Of a stretch of 64,000 nucleotides of DNA, positions 8,136-17,503 are shown one piece after another. Made by a program: the position numbers and the translations under genes. Below the pieces are notes generated by a model. It had not been told where the DNA came from. It saw nothing but the letters and a program-made list of their open reading frames with translations, and made no database searches. Numbering within the stretch: position 1 is the stretch's first letter; every line of letters starts with the position of its first letter. The stretch is from the IMG/VR virus record IMGVR_UViG_3300041411_000178, positions 1-64,000 of that record. One strand, given 5' to 3'.

Positions 8136-9752
8136 ATGAAACCCACAAACCTTACGTTACTGGACTTTAACAAAATCGGTCCACCTGTGTTTCAACCGGT
8201 GACGTCCACTGACGCGTTTGAAGGCATGACCCAAAACCTCAACGAGGAAGGTCTTTATTCTCCTGAAATCTTCGGCAAGTTGGGTAGCAAAGAGCGCGAC
8301 GAGACCGAAGCGTTTATCGATACCAAATTAGAAATATTCAACCCAACGTACTTTAAAGCGATGATTCAAACAAAGTCGCTTTACCTCGGAATTATCAAAG
8401 GCACGGAATACGCCGTCTGGGACCCGCAGGCCAAAGATTTCATAAAATCCAACCTCCTCGACGGGGAGACTGGTTTCAGTTTCTTTGTGAGTCACTTCAA
8501 AGAATTGCAACCCACCCTGTCCGAGAGTTACAAGCGTAAACAAAAGGTTGAACTGGTTCAGCGCTTCAAGCCGATTGCATTGGCGAATAAGGTTCTGGTT
8601 CCGCCCGCCGGTCTTCGGGACATTGAGTTCCAACCGGATGGTTCTTCAGTAGAACCTGAGATCACCGACCTATACCGCAAGCTGTTGTTCCGCACGCGGG
8701 TAGTGTCACTGGGTAGCAAGGAAGATGGTGACAACCCACTGTATGATACGGTGCGTTGGGGACTTCAGAGTTCCTACAACGATATCGATCAGTACATCTT
8801 CGATCTGATGGACGGGAAGTCGGGTCTGTTCCAACGTCGGGTTTCGACTCGGGGTGTGGTGTCGGGTACTCGTAACGTTATTACCGCCCGTAAGGTCTCC
8901 AGAGAACACTTGCACAAAGGGAACGGGGTTAACCCGAACTCGGTGGACATGGGTCTCTATCAAGCGTTGCTGAACTTTCAGTACGTTTGTATTCACGCAT
9001 TGCTCACTAAGTACCTGGGGGATATTTTCCAGCCAGGCTCCCAAAACGTCAAGTTGGTTAACACCAAGACTCTGGAGTACGAATATGTCGAGGTCGCAGC
9101 AGCTGTTGTCGAAAAGTGGTCAACGGCCACAGGCATCTCCAAACTCTTCAACGGTTTCGGAAACGCTCGACTCCGCTCCAAACCCATCATCCTTTCTGGG
9201 CACTATCTGGCGCTGGTGTACGACGACGGTCATGATGTTTGTGTCCTGAGTGACATCAACGATCTGCCTGCCGGGAAAGATCGTAAACTGGTGACACCTA
9301 TCACCTACATGCAGCTCTATTACCTGTCCTGCCACAAAGTCATTGGCGAACAGGTTTCCCAGCAGACGCGTTACCCGGTAATCGGTATCGGTTCCATCTT
9401 CCCTGCCAAAGTTAACCTCTTGAGCATTGAAGGGGCCAAGCCGCGAACCATCCGTAACTCCGAGTGGGATGTGATCGAAGAGTGCATGCGCTATCCGCAC
9501 AACCTTGAAAAGCCTGATTACTTTGACGCCATGTCGGTAGACCCAAGTCGTGAAGCCGGTCTCGATTCCGACCACGACGGTGACATGCTCAACAGTAACA
9601 GTGTCTGTGCCGAAGACAGTAAGGCTCAGGTTAACGATCTATTCGGTAAACGTGAGTACTACATCAGCGGCAGCAATCGGTTCCTTTATGACCCTGTGAA
9701 CGAACCTATCTTGTTTATGCTCAAAGCCGCCACCAGCGGTATGGAGAAATAA
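8136..9752 (+). CDS. Virion RNA polymerase beta' subunit, N-terminal/catalytic part (phiKZ gp180-like)
   Basis: EGLYSPEIFG motif, GTRNVIT, catalytic DxDGD (DSDHDGD). Confidence 0.9.
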   Translation: MKPTNLTLLDFNKIGPPVFQPVTSTDAFEGMTQNLNEEGLYSPEIFGKLGSKERDETEAFIDTKLEIFNPTYFKAMIQTKSLYLGIIKGTEYAVWDPQAKDFIKSNLLDGETGFSFFVSHFKELQPTLSESYKRKQKVELVQRFKPIALANKVLVPPAGLRDIEFQPDGSSVEPEITDLYRKLLFRTRVVSLGSKEDGDNPLYDTVRWGLQSSYNDIDQYIFDLMDGKSGLFQRRVSTRGVVSGTRNVITARKVSREHLHKGNGVNPNSVDMGLYQALLNFQYVCIHALLTKYLGDIFQPGSQNVKLVNTKTLEYEYVEVAAAVVEKWSTATGISKLFNGFGNARLRSKPIILSGHYLALVYDDGHDVCVLSDINDLPAGKDRKLVTPITYMQLYYLSCHKVIGEQVSQQTRYPVIGIGSIFPAKVNLLSIEGAKPRTIRNSEWDVIEECMRYPHNLEKPDYFDAMSVDPSREAGLDSDHDGDMLNSNSVCAEDSKAQVNDLFGKREYYISGSNRFLYDPVNEPILFMLKAATSGMEK

Positions 9753-9756
9753 AGGT

Positions 9757-12700
9757 ATGAATATCCCATCGGCGAACACGCTGAGTCCCCTAGACGCAGT
9801 AACGGGGGATGAAGCACTCTACCCCCAGTTCTACCGCGCCTTTGTACAGCGTAAGCGTCAAGAGTTGATCGCCCCTGTGTTCATCGGGATTGGCGAGATT
9901 ATCTTGCCACGTGGGTCGCTGGTTCACTTCTTCCCAAACAACCCACAAGAGATCGGTCCTTCGATTTCTGAAGCCTTTATCAGCAACTACCCGGATGAGG
10001 TGTTTGTTGAGTTCCCGGCGAAGTACACCCCGGTGATTGGCAACGGTCGCGCAGTACAGATCGAACCCCGCAAGATCATCACGGGTTATCGTGGGTCGCA
10101 CTACAAGTACAACTGGACCAAGGACATCAACACGGTCTACAACAAGGACAAGGTACTGGTTGTTAAGAGCTACGGCCTCGCCGACATGCTCTGGCATCCA
10201 CGTGCTTCGCTGTTTATCAATTTCGAGAAGTATTACAACCACTTCAACCTGTTGATGGATGGCGTTAACGAAGAAGCTGAGCGCAGCAAACGCCGTAAGC
10301 AGTTCTACCGTATTGACCTGCCGCTGCACATGCCGTCGTTTACTGACCTGATGATCGACTACGACCATTACGTCGAAAGCTTCCGTGACGGTAAGCCGTT
10401 GCCGAGCAACAAGACCGTTCGGACTACCAAGCAGGAGAACTCCTACTGGTTGATGGACTGGATGGCGTTCCTGTTTGGTGACAACGAATTCAGTCTGCTG
10501 AATAAGCTGTCTGATAAAGCGATCGAAGATTTCCACCTGATCTTTGTTTTCAACAGTCGTGCACTGGTGATTCACCTGGGTACGCTGAAAGGGTGGTTGG
10601 ATGCAGAGATGGATCCTAAAGCAAAAGCCAAGGAAGGCAGCGCGCCAAAGAGCAACCGTGATAAACACGGAAAGCGTTTGAACGCATCCAAGCGTGTTTA
10701 CCTGGCCTTGCTGAACCTTACCCGAGGTGGTGTCTCGGAAGAGGAAGTAGTAAAAGAGGAAAAATCCGATGGAAGAGGAGAAGAAACAGCGTCGGCTGGG
10801 GGCGTGGTTGCAGAAGCGCCGGGAGCTGAGAAAGGGAAAGGCAAAGTATCCGGTGGATCCGGAGAAGGAACGCTTCCTCGCAAAAATGACAGTAAGCGAA
10901 CTGTTGATCATCCTGATCCTCTCCGTGATGCTTTCGGTGGCGGTCAAAAAGCTGACGACGGAGTTCATGAAGGGGCCGGACAAGAGGGAGACGGAACAAA
11001 TTCTGAAAGCCTTGAAGAGTGGACATCACACGTAGACGACCGTCTGCTGGAACAAGACAAGGTGGTTGCAGATACTTCGATCAAGAAGGATCCGTTTCCC
11101 AAGTTTGAAAGTGGCGTAGGGGCTGCTCTGGAAGAAGTAGCGCGTGAGGGTAAGCTGTCTGTTTCCACTCAGCAGTTCTTCATGCGTAAAGCGACTCAGG
11201 TGTATCACATCGAAATGGAAAACGGCCAGAGTCTGGCTGAATACATGGAGATCAAACCAGAGGAGCTGAAGACGCTTACCAGCGACGCAAAGATCGAGGG
11301 TAACTTCCCCACGATTCTCGACCAATCGATGCTCCAGAGCCGTGCCAAGGTCTTGAAGCAGGGTTATGTGGACAAGTTCCTGCATAAGGACATTGCCCGC
11401 ATGGCAGTCGGTATTCAAAACGCCGGCTTTGCGTTGAACGACTACAAGCATGAGCAGATCCACGGTGTAGAAGGTTCCTACGACGTTGTGACGATGCAAG
11501 TCCACCACGTCGATGGCGAACAGTCGACTCACCAGGTTCGCTTCCCTATGGTGAACAAGGACAGTTCCTTCACTGTTGACGGGGTTAAGTCCCACCTGCA
11601 ACTGCAACGCATGGAACTGCCGATCCGCAAGATCGACGCCAGTACTGTGTTGTTGACCAGTCACTACGACCGCCAGCTCATGGTGACCCGTAGCAAGAAG
11701 GTTGTGGACGATCTGGGTGTGTGGCTGAAGAAACAGATCCTGCTGCGTGCTATGGCTGACAAGGACATCACGCTCAGTCGTGGTAATGGTCGTAACCGTG
11801 ACTATACTGGTCCGCGGATCTACACCATCTTGGCCAGTCGTTTCCAGTGGATCAATGTCGGCGGCTACATGCTGGACTTCCGCATCGAGAAGCTGCTGGA
11901 AGAGTATCCAGAGTTCAAGAAGTTCACCAAGCCGGACATGTTCCTGGTGGGCGTCAAGGACAAGAAGCCGATCACGATCGACAGCTACGGCAACCTCTAC
12001 CTGGACGGTGTTGAGTTTAACACCTTTGAAGGGTTGATGGGGATCAACTTCAGCAAAGCACCTAACGAACATGCCGTGATCAACATCAGCGGCTTTCAGT
12101 TTCCTCTGGGTGTTGTGCTGTGTTACTACTTCGGGATTGACGAACTGCTGAAGATCGTTAAGGCTACCACTCGAAGTGTCCCTATGGGTACCCGGCCTAA
12201 GTTGGCGGATGATGAATACGCCATTCAGTTCAACGACGAGTATTTGATCTTTAACCGTCGTGAGAAACTGTCCACCTTGATCTTCGGTGGGATGCCTAAG
12301 TTGAACAACATCAGTAACTTCAGCCGAAGTGACCTGAACAACAAAGGTATCTGGGGTCCGCTGATGGGAGACCCTAAGGTTCGTCCTTCTCAGTTCCTGG
12401 AGATGAACCTGCTGTACAAAATGTTTATCGACCCGGTCACTAAAGACCAGTTGAAACGCATGGGTTACAGCGAGTCCTTCCATTACCTGCTGATCGATGC
12501 TGCGAAGCTGCTGGAAACCGACTACACCCCTCACGAGGTGGAATTGGAAGAACAGCGGATCGTTGGCTATGAGCGTTTCGCAGGGCACTTCTACAAGGTC
12601 ATGGTAGGGGCATCGCGTCAGTTCTTCAACAAAGGTAAGGGTCGTAAGCAGAAGCTGGAGATCAACCCTGAAGCTGTGATCATGAACATCCTCAAGGACA

Positions 12701-14127
12701 CCTCGGTTAACCGGGTAGAGGAAGTGGGCCCAATTCACCAGTGTAAGGATCAGGAGGAACTGACCTTTGGTGGCACGGGTGGTCGCAGTGAGATCACGGT
12801 AGTTAAGCGCGCACGTGTGCAGCTGAAAAGCTATCGTGGCAAGATCTCTGAGGCGAACAAGGATAGCGGCAAGGTAGGTTTCGTAACTTACTTGACGTCT
12901 GATCCTTTGATCCTCGACTACCGCGGCAACATCGACACCAAGAGTAAACCATCTGCTACCTCGCTGTATTCGGTAACAGGTAACCTCGCATTCGGTATGA
13001 ACAAGGACGATACCAAGCGTGGCATGTTTACCTCGACTCAGGCGTCTCAAGCGGTCAGTGCTGAAAACTACACCATGCCAATCACCCGCACAGGCTATGA
13101 CAACATCATTGCTCAGCGGACCTCTGAACTCTACAGCAAGGTTGCTAAAGAGGCCGGTAAGGTAACGGCTGTTGAAGACGACCATATGGAAATCACCTAT
13201 AACGACGGCAACACTGAAAAGTATCCGTTGGGTTTGGTTATTGGTGAAGCCAGTGGTGAGTACCATCGTCACACCCGCGTTACCGATATGAAAGTCGGCG
13301 ACAAGTTTACGAAGGGTGAGATCCTGGGTTGGGACAAGCAGTGGTTTGCGCGTGACCCATTCTGCCCAGGACAAGTGGTTTGGAAAAACGGTCGTCAAGT
13401 TCGTATTGCGCTGGTAGAAGACCAAGACACCTACGAAGACTCCATCGCGGTTTCGAAAGAGATCATGGAGGAATCGATTACCCCGTTCCTGACGAAGAAC
13501 ACCTTCGCCGTGGATGTGGATAAAGTTGTGACCTTCCGGGTTAAACTAGGTGACCAAATCGACTACGACGCGATTTTATGCGAAATTGAAGAGAGCCACC
13601 TGGCGGGGGCTGGAGAGGCGAATAGCCAAGTCGGGGATATCAACCGTCTGGGGATCAAGCAGATCCGCTCCAAGTACCACGGCCAGGTCGTGAAGATCGA
13701 GGTGATGTACAACTCACCCGCGGAAAAGATGTCGGACAGTGTGCGTAAACTGGTTGCTGCTTCGGACAAAGAACGCAAGCGCATGTCTTCGATTGATGGC
13801 AGTGTTCCAACAGGTAGCGTGAGTAACAACCTCAACGTGAGTAAGCCTGTATTGTCACCAGGAAAAGTATTGTTTACTGTCTACGTCGAATCCATGGATG
13901 GTTCTACCACCTCGGACAAATACGTAATTGCCAACCAGATGAAAGGTACTGTCAACGGTGTAATGAAGAAGCCGTTGATGACTCAAGACGGTCGTGTGGT
14001 AGACGTCAAGTGTAGCTTTAAAGGCGGCTTTAACCGCATGGTACTGAGCTTACGGGATCGACTGGGTACAAGTGAACTGTCGGTTGGGGTTACCAAACAG
14101 GCTATTGCCATTTACAGAGGTAAGTAA
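9757..14127 (+). CDS. Virion RNA polymerase beta subunit (phiKZ gp178-like)
   Basis: 1456 aa; TFGGTGGRS, SGKVG, DDTKRGMF, TYEDSI, DKYVIANQMKG beta-like motifs; adjacent to beta'. Confidence 0.9.
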   Translation: MNIPSANTLSPLDAVTGDEALYPQFYRAFVQRKRQELIAPVFIGIGEIILPRGSLVHFFPNNPQEIGPSISEAFISNYPDEVFVEFPAKYTPVIGNGRAVQIEPRKIITGYRGSHYKYNWTKDINTVYNKDKVLVVKSYGLADMLWHPRASLFINFEKYYNHFNLLMDGVNEEAERSKRRKQFYRIDLPLHMPSFTDLMIDYDHYVESFRDGKPLPSNKTVRTTKQENSYWLMDWMAFLFGDNEFSLLNKLSDKAIEDFHLIFVFNSRALVIHLGTLKGWLDAEMDPKAKAKEGSAPKSNRDKHGKRLNASKRVYLALLNLTRGGVSEEEVVKEEKSDGRGEETASAGGVVAEAPGAEKGKGKVSGGSGEGTLPRKNDSKRTVDHPDPLRDAFGGGQKADDGVHEGAGQEGDGTNSESLEEWTSHVDDRLLEQDKVVADTSIKKDPFPKFESGVGAALEEVAREGKLSVSTQQFFMRKATQVYHIEMENGQSLAEYMEIKPEELKTLTSDAKIEGNFPTILDQSMLQSRAKVLKQGYVDKFLHKDIARMAVGIQNAGFALNDYKHEQIHGVEGSYDVVTMQVHHVDGEQSTHQVRFPMVNKDSSFTVDGVKSHLQLQRMELPIRKIDASTVLLTSHYDRQLMVTRSKKVVDDLGVWLKKQILLRAMADKDITLSRGNGRNRDYTGPRIYTILASRFQWINVGGYMLDFRIEKLLEEYPEFKKFTKPDMFLVGVKDKKPITIDSYGNLYLDGVEFNTFEGLMGINFSKAPNEHAVINISGFQFPLGVVLCYYFGIDELLKIVKATTRSVPMGTRPKLADDEYAIQFNDEYLIFNRREKLSTLIFGGMPKLNNISNFSRSDLNNKGIWGPLMGDPKVRPSQFLEMNLLYKMFIDPVTKDQLKRMGYSESFHYLLIDAAKLLETDYTPHEVELEEQRIVGYERFAGHFYKVMVGASRQFFNKGKGRKQKLEINPEAVIMNILKDTSVNRVEEVGPIHQCKDQEELTFGGTGGRSEITVVKRARVQLKSYRGKISEANKDSGKVGFVTYLTSDPLILDYRGNIDTKSKPSATSLYSVTGNLAFGMNKDDTKRGMFTSTQASQAVSAENYTMPITRTGYDNIIAQRTSELYSKVAKEAGKVTAVEDDHMEITYNDGNTEKYPLGLVIGEASGEYHRHTRVTDMKVGDKFTKGEILGWDKQWFARDPFCPGQVVWKNGRQVRIALVEDQDTYEDSIAVSKEIMEESITPFLTKNTFAVDVDKVVTFRVKLGDQIDYDAILCEIEESHLAGAGEANSQVGDINRLGIKQIRSKYHGQVVKIEVMYNSPAEKMSDSVRKLVAASDKERKRMSSIDGSVPTGSVSNNLNVSKPVLSPGKVLFTVYVESMDGSTTSDKYVIANQMKGTVNGVMKKPLMTQDGRVVDVKCSFKGGFNRMVLSLRDRLGTSELSVGVTKQAIAIYRGK
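10769..11035 (+). CDS. Putative overprinted small membrane protein in the +1 frame inside vRNAP beta (holin/antiholin candidate)
   Basis: 88 aa; GAGGA SD 8 nt before ATG; basic N-terminus, one hydrophobic helix LLIILILSVMLSVAV, charged C-terminus; coincides with a low-complexity linker of the host gene. Confidence 0.5.
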   Translation: MEEEKKQRRLGAWLQKRRELRKGKAKYPVDPEKERFLAKMTVSELLIILILSVMLSVAVKKLTTEFMKGPDKRETEQILKALKSGHHT

Positions 14128-14129
14128 AG

Positions 14130-15050
14130 ATGAGCTTCCGGACAGTCAACGGGGTTAAGGACGTACAAGTGGTTCTCGAAGAGAGCCATGTCTACTCTGG
14201 CGGTATTGACGGCGTCTGGGGTGCTGGGTCGGCGAATGGGGTTCTGAAGCTTCTTCAGGACTACCATTTGTTCCTGAACGGGGGGCGCTCTGTGCCCCTC
14301 CCAGTTACCGCAGGCAAGGGTCTTGAAATACAAGGCATCAAGGACATCCAGAGCAACCTTAAGCTGGTGGGTCTGTACACCGGTGAAGTTGACGGTATTC
14401 CGGGTAACGGCAGCCTGGGTGGTTTGCGTCAAGCAGCCTTCAGCTATGCCAAGCGCAACAAGGTTCCGTTCTACGACCTCGGTTGGAGTGCACGGGTTCC
14501 TGCGGCCTTCACCAAGAAGGTACGTGACTGGGCTACACAGCGCAGCATGTTCCCCGGTGCGGCTTCTGCACTGATGGCGTGCATGTGCTTTGAATCAGGC
14601 GGCACCTTCCGTCCTGATAAACAGAACAACGGCGGTAGCAACTACTGGGGTCTGATCCAATTCGGTAAGGACGCGGTAGAAGACTTGGCTAAAACGTTTG
14701 GGTTGAAGATCACCCTGGATGACGTCAAGGCCATGAGTCAACTGGATCAACTCGATCTGGTGTTCAAGTATTTCGAAATGTGGCAGAAGCGCGGCAAGGT
14801 TTACAAGCGCCTCGAAGACTTCTATCTGACGATCTTCTATCCCGCTGCTGTGGGTAAGGGTCCAGACGAAGTTCTGTTCACCAAAGGTTCTGAGGTTCCT
14901 ATCATTGCCAAGTCGTATGTCCAGAACAACGGATTCGACATCAACAAGGATGGGGCCATCACCGTGGGCGAGATCTGTACTCGTCTCTACGATTTCTATT
15001 ACCAAGGGATGTCGGTCAAAAACCGTGTCTCCAGCCCTTCACCACTCTAA
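14130..15050 (+). CDS. Modular endolysin: N-terminal peptidoglycan-binding repeats plus lysozyme/transglycosylase-like catalytic domain (EL188-like)
   Basis: DGVWGAGS and DGIPGNGS PG-binding motifs; FESGGTF...GLIQFG catalytic motif; follows vRNAP beta as in EL/OBP. Confidence 0.85.
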   Translation: MSFRTVNGVKDVQVVLEESHVYSGGIDGVWGAGSANGVLKLLQDYHLFLNGGRSVPLPVTAGKGLEIQGIKDIQSNLKLVGLYTGEVDGIPGNGSLGGLRQAAFSYAKRNKVPFYDLGWSARVPAAFTKKVRDWATQRSMFPGAASALMACMCFESGGTFRPDKQNNGGSNYWGLIQFGKDAVEDLAKTFGLKITLDDVKAMSQLDQLDLVFKYFEMWQKRGKVYKRLEDFYLTIFYPAAVGKGPDEVLFTKGSEVPIIAKSYVQNNGFDINKDGAITVGEICTRLYDFYYQGMSVKNRVSSPSPL

Positions 15051-15071: not shown

Positions 15072-15248
15072 ATGACTGATAAAGAGCAACTCATCACCAA
15101 CATCGTCACGGTAGCCAATACCGTGGAGGTGGTCAAAAAGACCCTCGCCAAAGTAGGGTTGCAGTTCCTTGCCCCTTTGGGTGAATCCATGCTGGATGAG
15201 AAAATCAGCAAGGCTATCGTGGGCTGCGTTCAAGGAGCGTCGAAATGA
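15072..15248 (+). CDS. Small hypothetical protein (58 aa, MTDKEQLITNIV...), missing from the ORF track
   Basis: AGGAGA SD; stop overlaps the next start (ATGA). Confidence 0.7.
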   Translation: MTDKEQLITNIVTVANTVEVVKKTLAKVGLQFLAPLGESMLDEKISKAIVGCVQGASK

Positions 15249-16774
15249 TTCGTGAATCCAGCATTGCACTGGGCGAACTGATCGCCGTTGGCGGGGGTAC
15301 CTTCCGCCCGAGTCAAGTGATCGCCGGCCTGAACGGTGAGTCCTCTGGCGCCCTGGCCTTTACTGACAACTTCCGTCAGGAGATCATGGATGCCAGCCAA
15401 GGCAACATGCACACCGAAACCGTTGAAGGCGCTTCTGATCGTCTGGCTGAGATGATCCGTGAGTCGTTGGGCAACATCCGCACTTACGGCGTGCCAATGG
15501 CGCGTCGTGTGTTGAAGGACACCCAGCTGCTGTATTCGCGTAAACAACTGCAAAGCCTGACCGAGCAGTTGGTCGAAGTCCAGTACATCAACGTGGACAA
15601 CGGCTTCTTCGAATCGGCGCTGTATCCAACTGAAGTCCGTGACAAGTCGCTCACCTACACCGGTGTTGACCTGAAGTTGGCCAACCAACTGAAATGGCGC
15701 TGGCCTGATCAGAAAGAGATCATCGACTTCATCGGTGCTTCTCACGGTGACCTCATCGCCATCCTCGAAGATGACGACGAAAGTCTGACCGACGCGGCCA
15801 GCCGTATCTCCGATTTCGGCGAACTGCAACAACTGTTCACGAACAACGACGGTATCTTCGATTTCTCGCAAATCAAGTCTGTTCGTTTCGTGCTGCTGCT
15901 GAAGATGTACGTCCTGCTGACCAAGATGTACTTCAGCGAAGATCCTGCGCCGTGGCTGGAAACGGGTGAACTGTCGACCTACCGCAGCTTCGTGAGCCTG
16001 CTGTGGAACGGCATGACTCTGTACCTCATCAAGCTGAAGCAGGTGGTGCAAGTGTACCGTCAGCGTCAACTGGTAATCGTGCCGGAGAAGCAGCCTTCGC
16101 TGACGCCTCACAGTCAGTCGCAATACGGTGACACTCGTTTCATGCAAGCCAAGCTGAAGGTGTTCTACACCAACGGTATCCTGGACAAGATCCAGTCGGC
16201 AGGCGTGGGTTTCACTGAATCGCTGATGGGTTACTACTGGGCATCGCTCACCGGTACCCCGATGACCATGACCGACTTCATCGCTGATGTGGGTAAAGGC
16301 GGTGTTCACGCCAAGGCTTACTACGGCCACATCCACGAGAAGCTCTCGACTCAGTCGCGTGACCTGTTCATCAAGGGTGGCGTTAAAGCGATCTTCGACT
16401 TCATCAGCGAGAACCCTGCGCTGCTGGAACGTGCGAATGCCAGTCGTGGCGAAAACCAGATGCTGATGAGCTGGGTAGCGGGTACCTTCTCCGGTCAACT
16501 GGAAAAGGCTCACTACATTCTGGCTGAGCGTTTCAGCGGTGATGCTGTGCTCGACGTTGCCGGTGGCGATGACGGTGCTGATCCTCGTCTGGACGCACTG
16601 CTGGAAACCACGCTGATCCCTGCGTTCCTGCGTGCCTGTGGTGCCACCCTGACGGCGGACATCATCGAAGCCACCTTCGTGGACACGAGCAAAGAAGACA
16701 ACGTCATGGACAAGCGTGAGCGCCTGACCGTTGCGGTGGTTAACGAACTCGTGAAACGCCTGCTCGGAGCTTAA
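15245..16774 (+). CDS. Conserved jumbo-phage protein, probably virion/head associated
   Basis: 509 aa, strong codon bias, operon with the head protease. Confidence 0.6.
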   Translation: MIRESSIALGELIAVGGGTFRPSQVIAGLNGESSGALAFTDNFRQEIMDASQGNMHTETVEGASDRLAEMIRESLGNIRTYGVPMARRVLKDTQLLYSRKQLQSLTEQLVEVQYINVDNGFFESALYPTEVRDKSLTYTGVDLKLANQLKWRWPDQKEIIDFIGASHGDLIAILEDDDESLTDAASRISDFGELQQLFTNNDGIFDFSQIKSVRFVLLLKMYVLLTKMYFSEDPAPWLETGELSTYRSFVSLLWNGMTLYLIKLKQVVQVYRQRQLVIVPEKQPSLTPHSQSQYGDTRFMQAKLKVFYTNGILDKIQSAGVGFTESLMGYYWASLTGTPMTMTDFIADVGKGGVHAKAYYGHIHEKLSTQSRDLFIKGGVKAIFDFISENPALLERANASRGENQMLMSWVAGTFSGQLEKAHYILAERFSGDAVLDVAGGDDGADPRLDALLETTLIPAFLRACGATLTADIIEATFVDTSKEDNVMDKRERLTVAVVNELVKRLLGA

Positions 16775-16777
16775 CCG

Positions 16778-17503
16778 ATGGACGTCGGCAATCTCAAGCA
16801 CGACCCCAAGATTGCAGACCGCCTGTTGATTGAAATGGAAGATGGGTCCGTTATTGCTAAACGCGATTTCGAGATTCATCTTCCTAAGCGTTTCGTTGAC
16901 AGCGGCATGGCAGAGGTTGGGGAAACAGTCACAACGCCAGTGGTGCTTGGGTTGGTGATCCCAGGGGATAGTTACGCTCCCCTGATGTCATTGATGGACA
17001 TTACCCTCGTTCCGTTGAGCATTCGTGAAGTTGCAATCAAGGGCACCCAGTACCTGGTGTTGGAGTTTACCAAAGGTGACACGGTAATCGACAACATCAA
17101 CGTGCTGCAAGAGCCCAATCACCCGTACGCGTATTACATGGAGTTCCTCTACTACGCCAAGCGTCCTTGGTATGTCACTGAAAACGCCTTGTCGTCGATG
17201 TTTGACTTGGCAGCTTCGCAGAGTGGCGACCCGGTAGGTAGCAGTCCTCAGGTGATGCGCGTCTACATGTCATTAATGTTCCGTGATCCAGACAACCTGG
17301 AGAAGCCGTACCGGTACAGTAAGGCGATGTTGGAAGGACGACCTCCAGTCATTGTAGGTCTTAATAACAGTGGGCTCCTGATCGACGGTACGTTCCCGAA
17401 AATCATGGGCGGTTACCAACGTGACAACACGGTAGCGGCTATTGTGAACCCTGATGACCGTGTTACTGACCTGGAGAAGATTATTAAAGGGGTCCCAGTA
17501 TGA
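16778..17503 (+). CDS. Conserved jumbo-phage protein (phiKZ gp176-like by position)
   Basis: 241 aa, directly upstream of the protease with ATGA overlap. Confidence 0.6.
   Translation: MDVGNLKHDPKIADRLLIEMEDGSVIAKRDFEIHLPKRFVDSGMAEVGETVTTPVVLGLVIPGDSYAPLMSLMDITLVPLSIREVAIKGTQYLVLEFTKGDTVIDNINVLQEPNHPYAYYMEFLYYAKRPWYVTENALSSMFDLAASQSGDPVGSSPQVMRVYMSLMFRDPDNLEKPYRYSKAMLEGRPPVIVGLNNSGLLIDGTFPKIMGGYQRDNTVAAIVNPDDRVTDLEKIIKGVPV

What the first reader, a model, noticed from the sequence alone, without database searches (positions are those of the whole stretch)
10750..11035. Hidden overprinted membrane-protein gene inside vRNAP beta, upstream of the endolysin: candidate holin or lysis regulator
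Seen: an 88-codon +1-frame ORF with GAGGA at 8-nt spacing. It encodes a very basic N-terminus (KKQRR...KRRELRKGKAK), one clean hydrophobic helix (LLIILILSVMLSVAV) ended by KK, and a short charged tail. It covers the Gly/Glu low-complexity linker of the beta subunit, where the main frame appears to use GGA/AGA codons more than the rest of the gene. Known: nested out-of-frame lysis genes exist (lambda Rz1, phiX174 E, MS2 L), and to my knowledge holins are poorly identified in phiKZ-like phages. The endolysin is the next gene and has no signal peptide. Inference: a dual-coding region supplying a membrane or lysis function that gene callers miss.
Basis: partly seen in the sequence, partly recalled or inferred. 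Interest (0 to 1): 0.85.

Follow-up and report, generated by a model that had tools for sequence, protein, structure and literature searches.

The report
Hidden membrane-protein gene inside phage polymerase gene
A small gene for a membrane protein lies in a second reading frame inside a giant phage's virion RNA polymerase gene, is kept by selection across a whole branch of these phages (including EL and OBP), is annotated in none of the records checked, and has an untested function.

Summary
Window 10769..11035 (+) is an 88-codon ORF in the +1 frame of the 1456-codon virion RNA polymerase beta-like gene (9757..14127, phiKZ gp178 homologue). GAGGA lies 8 nt before its ATG.

An open +1 frame here is not unusual in itself (P 0.03-0.41 under synonymous shuffles). 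The evolutionary signal is decisive:
- Synonymous variation of the host frame collapses exactly over the ORF.
- Codon-position periodicity switches to the +1 frame.
- The +1 frame is under purifying selection (omega 0.38), while the host frame becomes nearly neutral (0.88, against 0.2 elsewhere).
- Two other phage clades repeat this pattern (Vibrio Gorgonvirinae, OBP group).

The ORF, its start and its single transmembrane helix were intact in every carrier examined, over 40 genome records in all. Carriers form one fully supported side of the host-gene tree. phiKZ, PA1C, RAY, Proteus phage 10, Goslar and RsoM3USA lack it.

No family library or sequence database gave a homologue outside this nested site. 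None of the 36 GenBank/RefSeq records found with three clades' nested proteins annotates it.

The holin or lysis reading is plausible but untested. The genome also holds a conventional holin candidate beside its spanin genes.

The parts
9757..14127 (+). Host gene: virion RNA polymerase beta-like subunit (1456 aa), homologue of phiKZ gp178. Its variable Gly/Glu/Asp linker (about aa 330-425) carries the nested gene.
   Evidence: ORF list. tblastn finds 311 phage records annotated as RNA polymerase beta subunit, including EL at 56% and phiKZ gp178.
10748..10753 (+). Two +1-frame stop codons (TAG TAA) directly upstream. They rule out an N-terminal extension and leave only 5 codons in which a frameshift from the host frame could enter.
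   Evidence: Sequence; stop-to-stop segment 10754-11032.
10756..10760 (+). Shine-Dalgarno-like GAGGA, 8 nt before the ATG. It lies in the least structured 50-nt stretch of the whole gene.
   Evidence: Sequence. AGAGGA/AGGAGG-type motifs lie 5-10 nt upstream of the conserved ATG in 11 of the 14 lineages and are weak or absent in AhC3_1, N1M2 and PS1. Local folding energy is -2.4 kcal/mol against a gene mean of -10.2.
10769..11035 (+). Nested (overprinted) gene, 88 codons plus TAG, in the +1 frame of the host gene.
   Evidence: The ORF was intact in every carrier examined. Host-frame synonymous diversity falls to 0.04-0.14 against about 0.35. The +1 omega is 0.38 [0.30-0.48]. Periodicity switches to the +1 frame.
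10769..10888 (+). N-terminal basic domain (aa 1-40, net +7, conserved W13 and RRxLRK), predicted cytoplasmic.
   Evidence: Alignments A1/A2; charge counts; AF2 helices 2-21 and 31-38.
10889..10945 (+). Single transmembrane helix (aa 41-59), encoded by T at host-frame third positions.
   Evidence: KD19 = 2.44. Host-frame third-position T is 0.71 here against 0.23 gene-wide, and 0.53-0.76 in every lineage. AF2 helix 42-67 has pLDDT about 85.
10946..11032 (+). C-terminal tail (aa 60-88) with a conserved P-D/E-x-R-E-x-E-x-I-L amphipathic helix, predicted periplasmic. It ends just where the conserved host-frame motif EEWTSHVDD begins.
   Evidence: Alignments; AF2 helix 72-83; three-frame translations.
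14130..15050 (+). Context: endolysin-like gene (306 aa, no signal or TM segment), the next gene downstream.
   Evidence: ORF list. PHROG hits are phrog_4928, baseplate hub/peptidase/endolysin-type. Its EL homologue was seen only as an unnamed CDS, and the OBP counterpart is annotated endolysin.
8136..9752 (+). Context: beta-prime-like N-terminal vRNAP subunit (538 aa, DHDGD motif), homologue of phiKZ gp180.
   Evidence: ORF list; synteny with annotated records.

Best explanation
This is a real protein-coding gene created by overprinting. The variable, acidic Gly/Glu linker of the virion RNA polymerase beta-like subunit is also read in the +1 frame, from its own Shine-Dalgarno/ATG, to give an 88-aa protein. 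The protein has a basic N-terminal domain (predicted cytoplasmic), one transmembrane helix and a short amphipathic C-terminal tail (predicted periplasmic), so it is a bitopic inner-membrane protein, N-in/C-out. Over these 267 nt, selection acts mainly on the +1 product, while the polymerase linker is nearly free to vary as long as it stays open. The gene probably arose once, in the common ancestor of the EL / RisingSun / Miami / Gorgonvirinae / OBP / Aeromonas-phage branch of nucleus-forming jumbo phages. SHOWN here: the ORF, start and helix are conserved; purifying selection is specific to the +1 frame in three clades; all copies are nested; carriers form a single clade. INFERRED: translation by internal initiation on the polymerase mRNA, therefore at the time the virion polymerase is made (middle/late); membrane insertion and topology. 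FUNCTION is a guess, about 0.3-0.35: an accessory lysis-control membrane protein (holin-like or holin-modulating) acting with the soluble endolysin encoded next door. It is more likely a clade-specific addition than the ancestral holin. The confidence below refers to the shown and inferred gene-level claims, not to the lysis role.
For: (1) The ORF, ATG and TM helix are intact in all 10 metagenomic relatives at 55-100% host-protein identity and in 6 further contigs. They are also intact in EL-like, RisingSun, KPN8/Miami, pTD1 and 6 other Gorgonvirinae, FishSpeaker, OBP, N1M2, Kc263, Yubaba, AhC3_1, D6 and PS1. (2) Host-frame synonymous diversity drops from about 0.35 to 0.04-0.14 exactly over nt 10777-11017, while host amino-acid divergence peaks at 0.46-0.52. 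(3) p-distance by host codon position is 0.35/0.26/0.16 in the overlap against 0.15-0.18/0.10-0.12/0.39-0.40 elsewhere. That is the 3rd>1st>2nd pattern of the +1 frame. (4) OLGenie-type estimates give +1 omega 0.38 [0.30-0.48] against 0.77-0.86 in the rest of the gene. Host omega is 0.88 against 0.20-0.23, and the +2 control is 1.13. The result repeats in Gorgonvirinae (0.42 [0.32-0.53]; host 0.97 against 0.16) and in the OBP group (0.52 [0.41-0.67]; host 0.68 against 0.19-0.24). (5) Mean pairwise identity is 0.68 for the +1 protein against 0.52 for the host frame over the same nucleotides. (6) GGA and third-position-T codon skews in the host frame are the ones needed to encode the +1 protein. 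(7) There is no Rfam match and no unusual RNA folding (z = +0.54). (8) Carriers are one side of a 100/100 branch of the host-gene tree. [quoted passage not shown]
Against: There is no direct evidence of translation. No Ribo-seq or proteomics exists for any carrier in the literature searched. The only runs holding this phage are metagenome contigs. For the deepest lineages the evidence is weaker. For OBP, N1M2, PS1 and D6 the synonymous-shuffle null is weak (P 0.04-0.09). The Aeromonas trio and the EL-RisingSun pair are too saturated for the omega test. Against the lysis role: the protein shows no similarity to any holin, spanin or other family. A conventional holin candidate sits beside the spanin pair at 130.4-132.1 kb: a 2-TMD protein of phrog_14084, also present in EL, OBP and RAY. 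Non-carrier relatives lyse without this gene. RAY has the endolysin-like gene next to its polymerase gene but no nested ORF.
Confidence: 0.87

Rival explanations
1. The gene is real, but its product has no role in lysis. It could be a late inner-membrane factor for something else. Examples are anchoring of procapsid or virion-polymerase assembly at the membrane, a role at the early membrane vesicle that encloses the injected DNA and virion polymerase, or exclusion of superinfecting phage.
For: The gene is a clade-specific de novo addition inside a virion-polymerase gene. It has no similarity to lysis proteins. A conventional holin candidate and a spanin pair exist elsewhere in the genome. The basic cytoplasmic domain is partly a by-product of reading Glu/Gly codons in the +1 frame, so its charge need not be holin-specific.
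Against: Nothing tested here points positively to any of these roles. Known small late-expressed single-TMD phage proteins are mostly lysis proteins (general knowledge). The neighbourhood of a soluble endolysin fits lysis slightly better.
Confidence: 0.5
2. The ORF is a chance open frame. A hydrophilic low-complexity linker rarely makes +1 stops, and the hydrophobic stretch is a by-product of the host-frame motif.
For: Openness alone has P 0.03-0.41 under synonymous shuffles. PA1C has an open 88-codon +1 frame at the same place without a TM helix. For OBP, N1M2, PS1 and D6 the host protein by itself makes a fairly hydrophobic +1 frame (null mean KD 1.6-2.1).
Against: Chance does not explain three findings: the collapse of synonymous variation confined to the ORF, the switch of codon-position periodicity, and the frame-specific omega of 0.38-0.52 in three clades with a neutral +2 control. 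It also does not explain an invariant ATG with a Shine-Dalgarno motif before it in most lineages.
Confidence: 0.03
3. The constraint is on nucleic acid rather than on a protein. Candidates are an internal promoter, an RNA structure, or a packaging or regulatory element inside the polymerase gene.
For: Reduced synonymous variation alone cannot distinguish an RNA or DNA element from a second coding frame.
Against: The constraint has 3-nt periodicity in the +1 frame. Changes that are silent in +1 accumulate 2.6 times faster than those that alter it. Distant clades keep the protein architecture with unrelated nucleotides. There is no Rfam hit, the folding z-score is +0.54, and no promoter- or terminator-like site lies in the ORF.
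Confidence: 0.03
4. The +1 frame is reached by programmed ribosomal frameshifting. The product would be the N-terminal third of the polymerase subunit fused to a membrane anchor, not an independent small protein.
For: Both frames are open and overlap. In one relative (L004) the +1 frame is open for 15 more codons upstream.
Against: In the window and most relatives, +1 stops lie 4-6 codons before the ATG. The ATG is invariant in 18 of 18 aligned lineages, and an SD-like motif precedes it in 11 of 14 lineages checked. No slippery motif is conserved in that short interval.
Confidence: 0.04

Closest known systems
Lambda Rz1 nested in Rz (o-spanin gene embedded in the +1 frame of the i-spanin gene)
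   Same: A small envelope-protein gene lies wholly inside a larger phage gene in the +1 frame. It has its own ribosome-binding site and start, and both frames are translated.
   Different: Rz1 is a lipoprotein with a lipobox and no TMD, and it works together with its host gene's product. The nested product here has no lipobox and one TMD. Its host gene is a virion RNA polymerase subunit with no known envelope role. This genome has its own separate spanin pair at 131.2-132.1 kb.
phiKZ holin gp142 (class III, 'IIIB': one TMD, N-in/C-out, small periplasmic tail; PMC12894885)
   Same: It has the same predicted gross topology and a similarly short (about 28-30 aa) amphipathic periplasmic tail. It comes from the same phage family and acts with a soluble endolysin.
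   Different: There is no sequence or profile similarity (hhalign probability 0.3%). gp142 has an 80-aa helical cytoplasmic domain that binds a regulator, is a free-standing gene inside a lysis cassette, and belongs to phrog_14484. That family was found only in phiKZ and PA1C and not in any carrier.
phiX174 E and MS2 L (overprinted single-gene lysis proteins)
   Same: These are de novo genes born by overprinting inside essential genes, and they encode small membrane proteins. Like L, the protein here has a basic N-terminal part followed by a hydrophobic part and an L-S dipeptide.
   Different: E and L belong to tiny ssDNA/ssRNA phages that have no endolysin. The L-S dipeptide is not conserved across this family (RisingSun, KPN8, OBP and others lack it). 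This phage has an endolysin and spanins, so a single-gene lysis mechanism is not needed.
T4 holin T and its antiholins RI/RIII
   Same: T has a single-TMD, N-in/C-out topology. T4 is also a precedent for lysis-timing genes scattered around a large phage genome rather than grouped in one cassette.
   Different: T has a large (about 160 aa) periplasmic domain, and RI is a SAR-anchored periplasmic protein. No similarity to either was found through the PHROG or Pfam libraries.

Membership tests
Overprinted (nested, out-of-frame) protein-coding genes of phages | ORF lies wholly inside another gene, in a different frame, with both frames open | tested here: met
   10769..11035 lies in the +1 frame of 9757..14127. 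The host frame is open across the ORF in every relative and contig examined.
Overprinted (nested, out-of-frame) protein-coding genes of phages | Own translation start (start codon with ribosome-binding site) | tested here: met
   The ATG is invariant in 18 of 18 aligned lineages. GAGGA/AGGAGG-type motifs lie 5-10 nt upstream in 11 of the 14 lineages checked. The start lies in the least structured part of the gene in the window clade. This is sequence-level evidence only.
Overprinted (nested, out-of-frame) protein-coding genes of phages | Purifying selection specific to the alternative frame | tested here: met
   The +1 omega is 0.38, 0.42 and 0.52 in three clades against about 0.8 background. 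The +2 control is 1.13. Periodicity switches to the +1 frame, and host-frame synonymous variation is suppressed.
Overprinted (nested, out-of-frame) protein-coding genes of phages | Product shown to be made (ribosome footprints, peptides, genetics) | not testable with these tools
   No Ribo-seq or proteomic data for any carrier were found. The public runs that hold the phage are metagenome contigs.
Holins (any class) | At least one transmembrane domain in a small protein | tested here: met
   There is one hydrophobic helix of 19-26 aa (KD19 = 2.44; AF2 helix 42-67) in an 88-aa protein, and it is conserved in all carriers.
Holins (any class) | Gene placed in a lysis cassette next to the endolysin and/or spanins | tested here: inconclusive
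   The ORF ends 3.1 kb upstream of the endolysin-like gene and sits inside that gene's immediate upstream neighbour. The spanin pair is 120 kb away and has its own 2-TMD neighbour.
Holins (any class) | Sequence membership of a described holin family | tested here: not met
   There is no hit in Pfam, PHROGs, NCBIfam or PDB, no meaningful Atlas hit, and no similarity to phiKZ gp142.
Holins (any class) | Timed, PMF-sensitive lethality, and release of a soluble endolysin (complements lambda S) | not testable with these tools
   This needs expression and complementation assays like those used for gp142 (PMC12894885).
Class III holin topology (T4 T, phiKZ gp142) | Single TMD, N-terminus in the cytoplasm, C-terminus in the periplasm | tested here: inconclusive
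   The positive-inside rule favours N-in: N-terminal net charge is +4 to +15 against -2 to +8 at the C-terminus, and 16 of 18 sequences are more positive at the N-terminus. This is a prediction only.
Spanins (Rz/Rz1 type) | i-spanin: N-terminal TMD plus a long periplasmic coiled coil. o-spanin: lipobox signal | tested here: not met
   The TMD is central, the periplasmic tail is only 29 aa, and there is no lipobox. True candidates lie at 131247..132111 (-) of the genome.
MS2 L-like lysis proteins | Basic N-terminal domain, hydrophobic domain, conserved L-S dipeptide | tested here: not met
   The basic and hydrophobic domains are present. The L-S dipeptide is invariant only in the window clade and is absent in RisingSun, KPN8, OBP, N1M2 and the Aeromonas phages.

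The most novel reading that the evidence does not exclude
The nested membrane protein may not be a lysis protein at all. It could be a partner of the virion polymerase that encodes it. One version is a late-made (possibly packaged) membrane anchor whose basic cytoplasmic domain binds the acidic polymerase linker encoded by the very same nucleotides. That would tether polymerase or procapsid assembly to the inner membrane, or tether the injected polymerase-DNA complex to the early membrane vesicle of nucleus-forming phages. This would be a gene and its overprinted partner co-evolving as a physical pair.
Probability: 0.06. Interest if true: 0.9.

Novelty: new member of a known kind. Interest (0 to 1): 0.64.

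Why it matters
Nested out-of-frame genes are known in phages (Rz1, E, L, K), but gene callers miss them. This one sits in well-studied model jumbo phages (EL, OBP) and in a whole branch of nucleus-forming phages, and it is absent from every annotation checked here.

It adds a conserved membrane protein to a group whose envelope-related steps are poorly known outside phiKZ. Those steps include lysis timing, assembly at the membrane and the early infection vesicle.

It is also an unusually clean natural example of gene birth by overprinting:
- The host linker is nearly neutral.
- The proto-state survives in relatives: PA1C has an open, basic, non-hydrophobic +1 frame.
- The gain maps to a single branch of the host-gene tree.

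There is a practical consequence as well. Engineering, codon-optimising or 'silently' recoding this polymerase gene would destroy a second gene.

Tried and rejected
- Homology searches for the 88-aa product or its family profile found nothing informative. Sources tried: Pfam, PHROGs and NCBIfam; PDB sequences; ESM Atlas; the word-indexed 5.8-billion protein set.
- The exhaustive HMM search gave only 5 true hits. The three whose contigs were looked up come from contig ends where the big gene is truncated, so they are the same nested gene and not free-standing copies.
- A six-frame profile search of the whole genomes of phiKZ, RAY, Goslar, PA1C and RsoM3USA gave no match at E <= 1. No free-standing ancestor was found.
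- phiKZ holin gp142 has no homologue in this genome or in 5 carriers. It is also absent from RAY, Goslar and RsoM3USA, so presence or absence of gp142 is not informative about complementarity.
- The RNA-element explanation was rejected.
- The frameshift-fusion explanation was judged unlikely.
- A dual-start (holin/antiholin) motif was considered. The second Met (M40) has no SD at a workable distance and is Leu in several lineages.
- The long antisense ORFs over the same gene (397 and 799 aa) are artefacts of avoiding TTA/CTA/TCA codons.
- Laying public runs gave only metagenome contigs. These give no information on expression, and the difference table was truncated.
- The metagenome scan returned the same contigs as the viral collection.
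- The AF2 model is helical but of low confidence (pLDDT 67, pTM 0.30), so no fold search was run on it.
I used the permitted 8-row alignment instead.
Full report
**1. The observation**

The window holds an 88-codon ORF at 10769..11035 (+). It lies in the +1 frame of a 1456-codon gene at 9757..14127. GAGGA (10756-10760) sits 8 nt before the ATG, and two +1-frame stops (TAG TAA, 10748-10753) lie just upstream.

The product has three parts:
- a basic N-terminus (14 K+R in 40 residues, net +7);
- one hydrophobic helix (aa 41-59) followed by KK;
- a 29-residue charged tail.

The host gene is the virion RNA polymerase beta-like subunit. Its closest named relatives are Pseudomonas phage EL (56% aa) and Erwinia phage RisingSun (53%), and phiKZ gp178 is a distant homologue. 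The genome is a complete 224-kb viral contig with terminal repeats, found in soil and rhizosphere metagenomes.

GGA makes up 10 of 19 Gly codons in the overlap against 5 of 98 elsewhere (P = 2e-6).

**2. Is it more than chance?**

Openness alone is not evidence. +1 stops need host codons with T at position 2 (xTA or xTG), and a Gly/Glu/Asp linker has few of these. When host codons are replaced by synonymous ones drawn from the gene's own usage, the +1 frame stays open in 28% of shuffles here and in 3-41% in relatives. An open frame together with a helix this hydrophobic is rare (4e-4 here; 5e-5 to 0.085 across lineages). The helix is built from T at host third positions: 0.71 here against 0.23 gene-wide, and 0.53-0.76 in every lineage.

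**3. Comparative evidence**

A scan of viral contigs returned ten loci at 55-100% host-protein identity. All ten keep the +1 ORF, its ATG, the helix and the C-terminal P-D-K-R-E-T-E-Q-I-L motif, even though the host-frame linker is visibly scrambled.

- **Synonymous variation.** A sliding scan of the whole host gene shows synonymous diversity of about 0.35 (range 0.21-0.49). It falls to 0.04-0.14 only in codons 341-400 (nt 10777-11017). At the same place, host amino-acid divergence is the highest in the gene, at 0.46-0.52.
- **Periodicity.** Substitution periodicity switches frame. By host codon position the p-distances are 0.35/0.26/0.16 in the overlap and 0.15-0.18/0.10-0.12/0.39-0.40 elsewhere. 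The overlap pattern is the 3rd>1st>2nd signature of the +1 frame.
- **Selection.** I used an OLGenie-type partition of sites (method: PMC7531306, in my own simplified implementation with internal controls). The +1 omega (dNN/dNS) is 0.38 [0.30-0.48] in the overlap against 0.77-0.86 in the rest of the gene. The host omega (dNN/dSN) is 0.88 [0.64-1.26] against 0.20-0.23. The +2 frame control is 1.13.
- **Identity.** Mean pairwise identity is 0.68 for the +1 protein and 0.52 for the host frame over the same nucleotides.
- **Near-identical strains.** The table of differences was truncated. Only two differences were listed inside the ORF. One is silent in +1 but Ala>Thr in the host frame. The other is Ala>Val inside the helix and silent in the host frame.

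**4. Breadth of distribution**

The same +1 ORF (basic N-terminus, one TM helix, short tail) sits at the same place in many named phages:
- EL-like phages, RisingSun, KPN8/Miami and FishSpeaker;
- pTD1 and six other Gorgonvirinae;
- OBP, N1M2, Kc263 and Yubaba;
- Aeromonas phages AhC3_1, D6 and PS1;
- by tblastn, also SXP01, AH04, Survivor and Sureiya.

EL itself carries it at NC_007623.1 197725-197988.

The selection test repeats independently in two clades. In Gorgonvirinae the +1 omega is 0.42 [0.32-0.53] and the host omega is 0.97 against 0.16 elsewhere. In the OBP group the +1 omega is 0.52 [0.41-0.67] and the host omega is 0.68 against 0.19-0.24. The Aeromonas trio and the EL-RisingSun pair are saturated and gave no power.

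phiKZ, PA1C, RAY, Proteus phage 10, Goslar and RsoM3USA have no such ORF. PA1C has an open, basic but non-hydrophobic +1 frame there, which looks like a proto-gene state.

On a maximum-likelihood tree of the host protein, the 17 carriers form one side of a 100/100 branch and the 6 non-carriers form the other. A family profile finds nothing in any frame of the non-carrier genomes and exactly one site in each carrier. One gain by overprinting is the simplest history.

**5. Start and alternatives**

The ATG is invariant in the 18-lineage alignment, and an AGAGGA/AGGAGG-type motif precedes it in 11 of the 14 lineages checked; AhC3_1, N1M2 and PS1 are weak. In the window clade the start lies in the least structured 50-nt stretch of the gene.

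There is no Rfam match, the folding z-score is +0.54, and no promoter- or terminator-like site falls inside the ORF. Together with the frame-specific signal, this excludes an RNA or DNA element. A frameshift fusion is unlikely because +1 stops lie 4-6 codons before the ATG and no slippery site is conserved.

**6. What the product is**

No library or database gave a relative: Pfam, PHROGs, NCBIfam, PDB, the Atlas and the 5.8-billion set. The exhaustive profile search found five small proteins. Three were traced to contig-end fragments of the same nested arrangement. None of the 36 GenBank/RefSeq records hit by tblastn with three clades' nested proteins lists anything but the polymerase gene under the match.

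AlphaFold2 gives four helices, with the TM helix (42-67) at pLDDT about 85 and the rest weaker, for a mean of 67. The charge balance predicts N-in/C-out.

**7. Function**

In favour of a lysis role:
- The product has a single TMD with class III-like topology.
- The next gene is a soluble endolysin-like protein.
- No other small TMD ORF lies in the first 23 kb of the genome.
- The phiKZ holin gp142, defined in 2026, has the same gross topology with a small periplasmic tail (PMC12894885).

Against a lysis role:
- There is no similarity to gp142 or to any holin family.
- The genome has a spanin pair at 131.2-132.1 kb (an N-terminal-TMD protein plus an overlapping lipobox protein). Its convergent neighbour is a 2-TMD protein of phrog_14084, which is conserved in EL (gp109), OBP and the non-carrier RAY. 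That neighbour is a more conventional and older holin candidate.
- RAY has the endolysin-like gene next to its polymerase gene but no nested ORF.

The nested gene is a clade-specific addition, so an accessory role is more likely than the core holin role. Examples are lysis timing, antiholin activity or another membrane function. I put a lysis-related role at about 0.3-0.35 and gene reality at about 0.9.

**8. Comparison and novelty**

The arrangement works like lambda Rz1 in Rz: a +1-nested gene for a small envelope protein with its own start. Its origin resembles phiX174 E and MS2 L, which were also born by overprinting. It is not a member of any described protein family.

It is therefore a new member of a known kind. 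Three things are notable: its breadth across a whole branch of Chimalliviridae-type jumbo phages, its location in the virion polymerase gene, and its absence from all the annotations checked. Literature searches found no report of it.

Noticed in passing
window 9790..10983 (-), 11026..13425 (-), 15230..16879 (-): Very long antisense ORFs (397, 799 and 549 aa) lie over real genes. They are by-products of codon bias. The polymerase gene has only 7 TTA/CTA/TCA codons in 1456, and their positions (9790, 11026, 13546 and so on) are exactly where the antisense ORFs end.
   Followed up: yes
genome G000 130446..132111 (outside the window; L032:947-2612): A spanin-like pair sits here: an i-spanin with an N-terminal TMD at 131563..132111 (-), and an overlapping lipobox protein at 131247..131777 (-). 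Its convergent neighbour is a 233-aa protein with two TM-like segments (phrog_14084). The same trio is present in EL (gp109-gp111). It is a conventional holin candidate for this phage group.
   Followed up: partly
L011:4686-5144, L017:3677-4082, L027:3534-3926: In EL-like phages, FishSpeaker and PS1 the same polymerase gene is split near codon 1065-1085 by an insert of about 0.4 kb with tiny ORFs. This looks like an intron or homing-endonuclease remnant. The window's gene is uninterrupted.
   Followed up: no
window 10912..10944 (host frame), and the same place in relatives: The host-frame linker keeps a short hydrophobic motif directly under the +1 TM helix: PLRDAF here and (I/L)LD(V/L)(F/Y) in most relatives. 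A similar motif exists in non-carriers (phiKZ NLIDIG, PA1C LLDLG). It may therefore predate the nested gene and may have seeded its hydrophobic segment.
   Followed up: partly
L025 (PA1C), host codons 318-406: This non-carrier has an open 88-codon +1 frame at the homologous place. The frame is basic but not hydrophobic (KD17 = 1.18), which is a possible picture of the pre-gene state.
   Followed up: no
window 15072..15248 (+): A conserved 58-aa protein without a TMD (phrog_17945, similar to PHIKZ177.1, Goslar gp208 and RAY gp166) follows the endolysin-like gene. Its function is unknown, and it is syntenic across carriers and non-carriers.
   Followed up: partly
genome G000 175622..175822 (+) and 180670..180840 (+): Two further small free-standing membrane-protein ORFs have no family match. 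One is 66 aa with two TMDs, and the other is 56 aa with a C-terminal TMD after an RRRR run. They are additional unassigned envelope-protein candidates.
   Followed up: no
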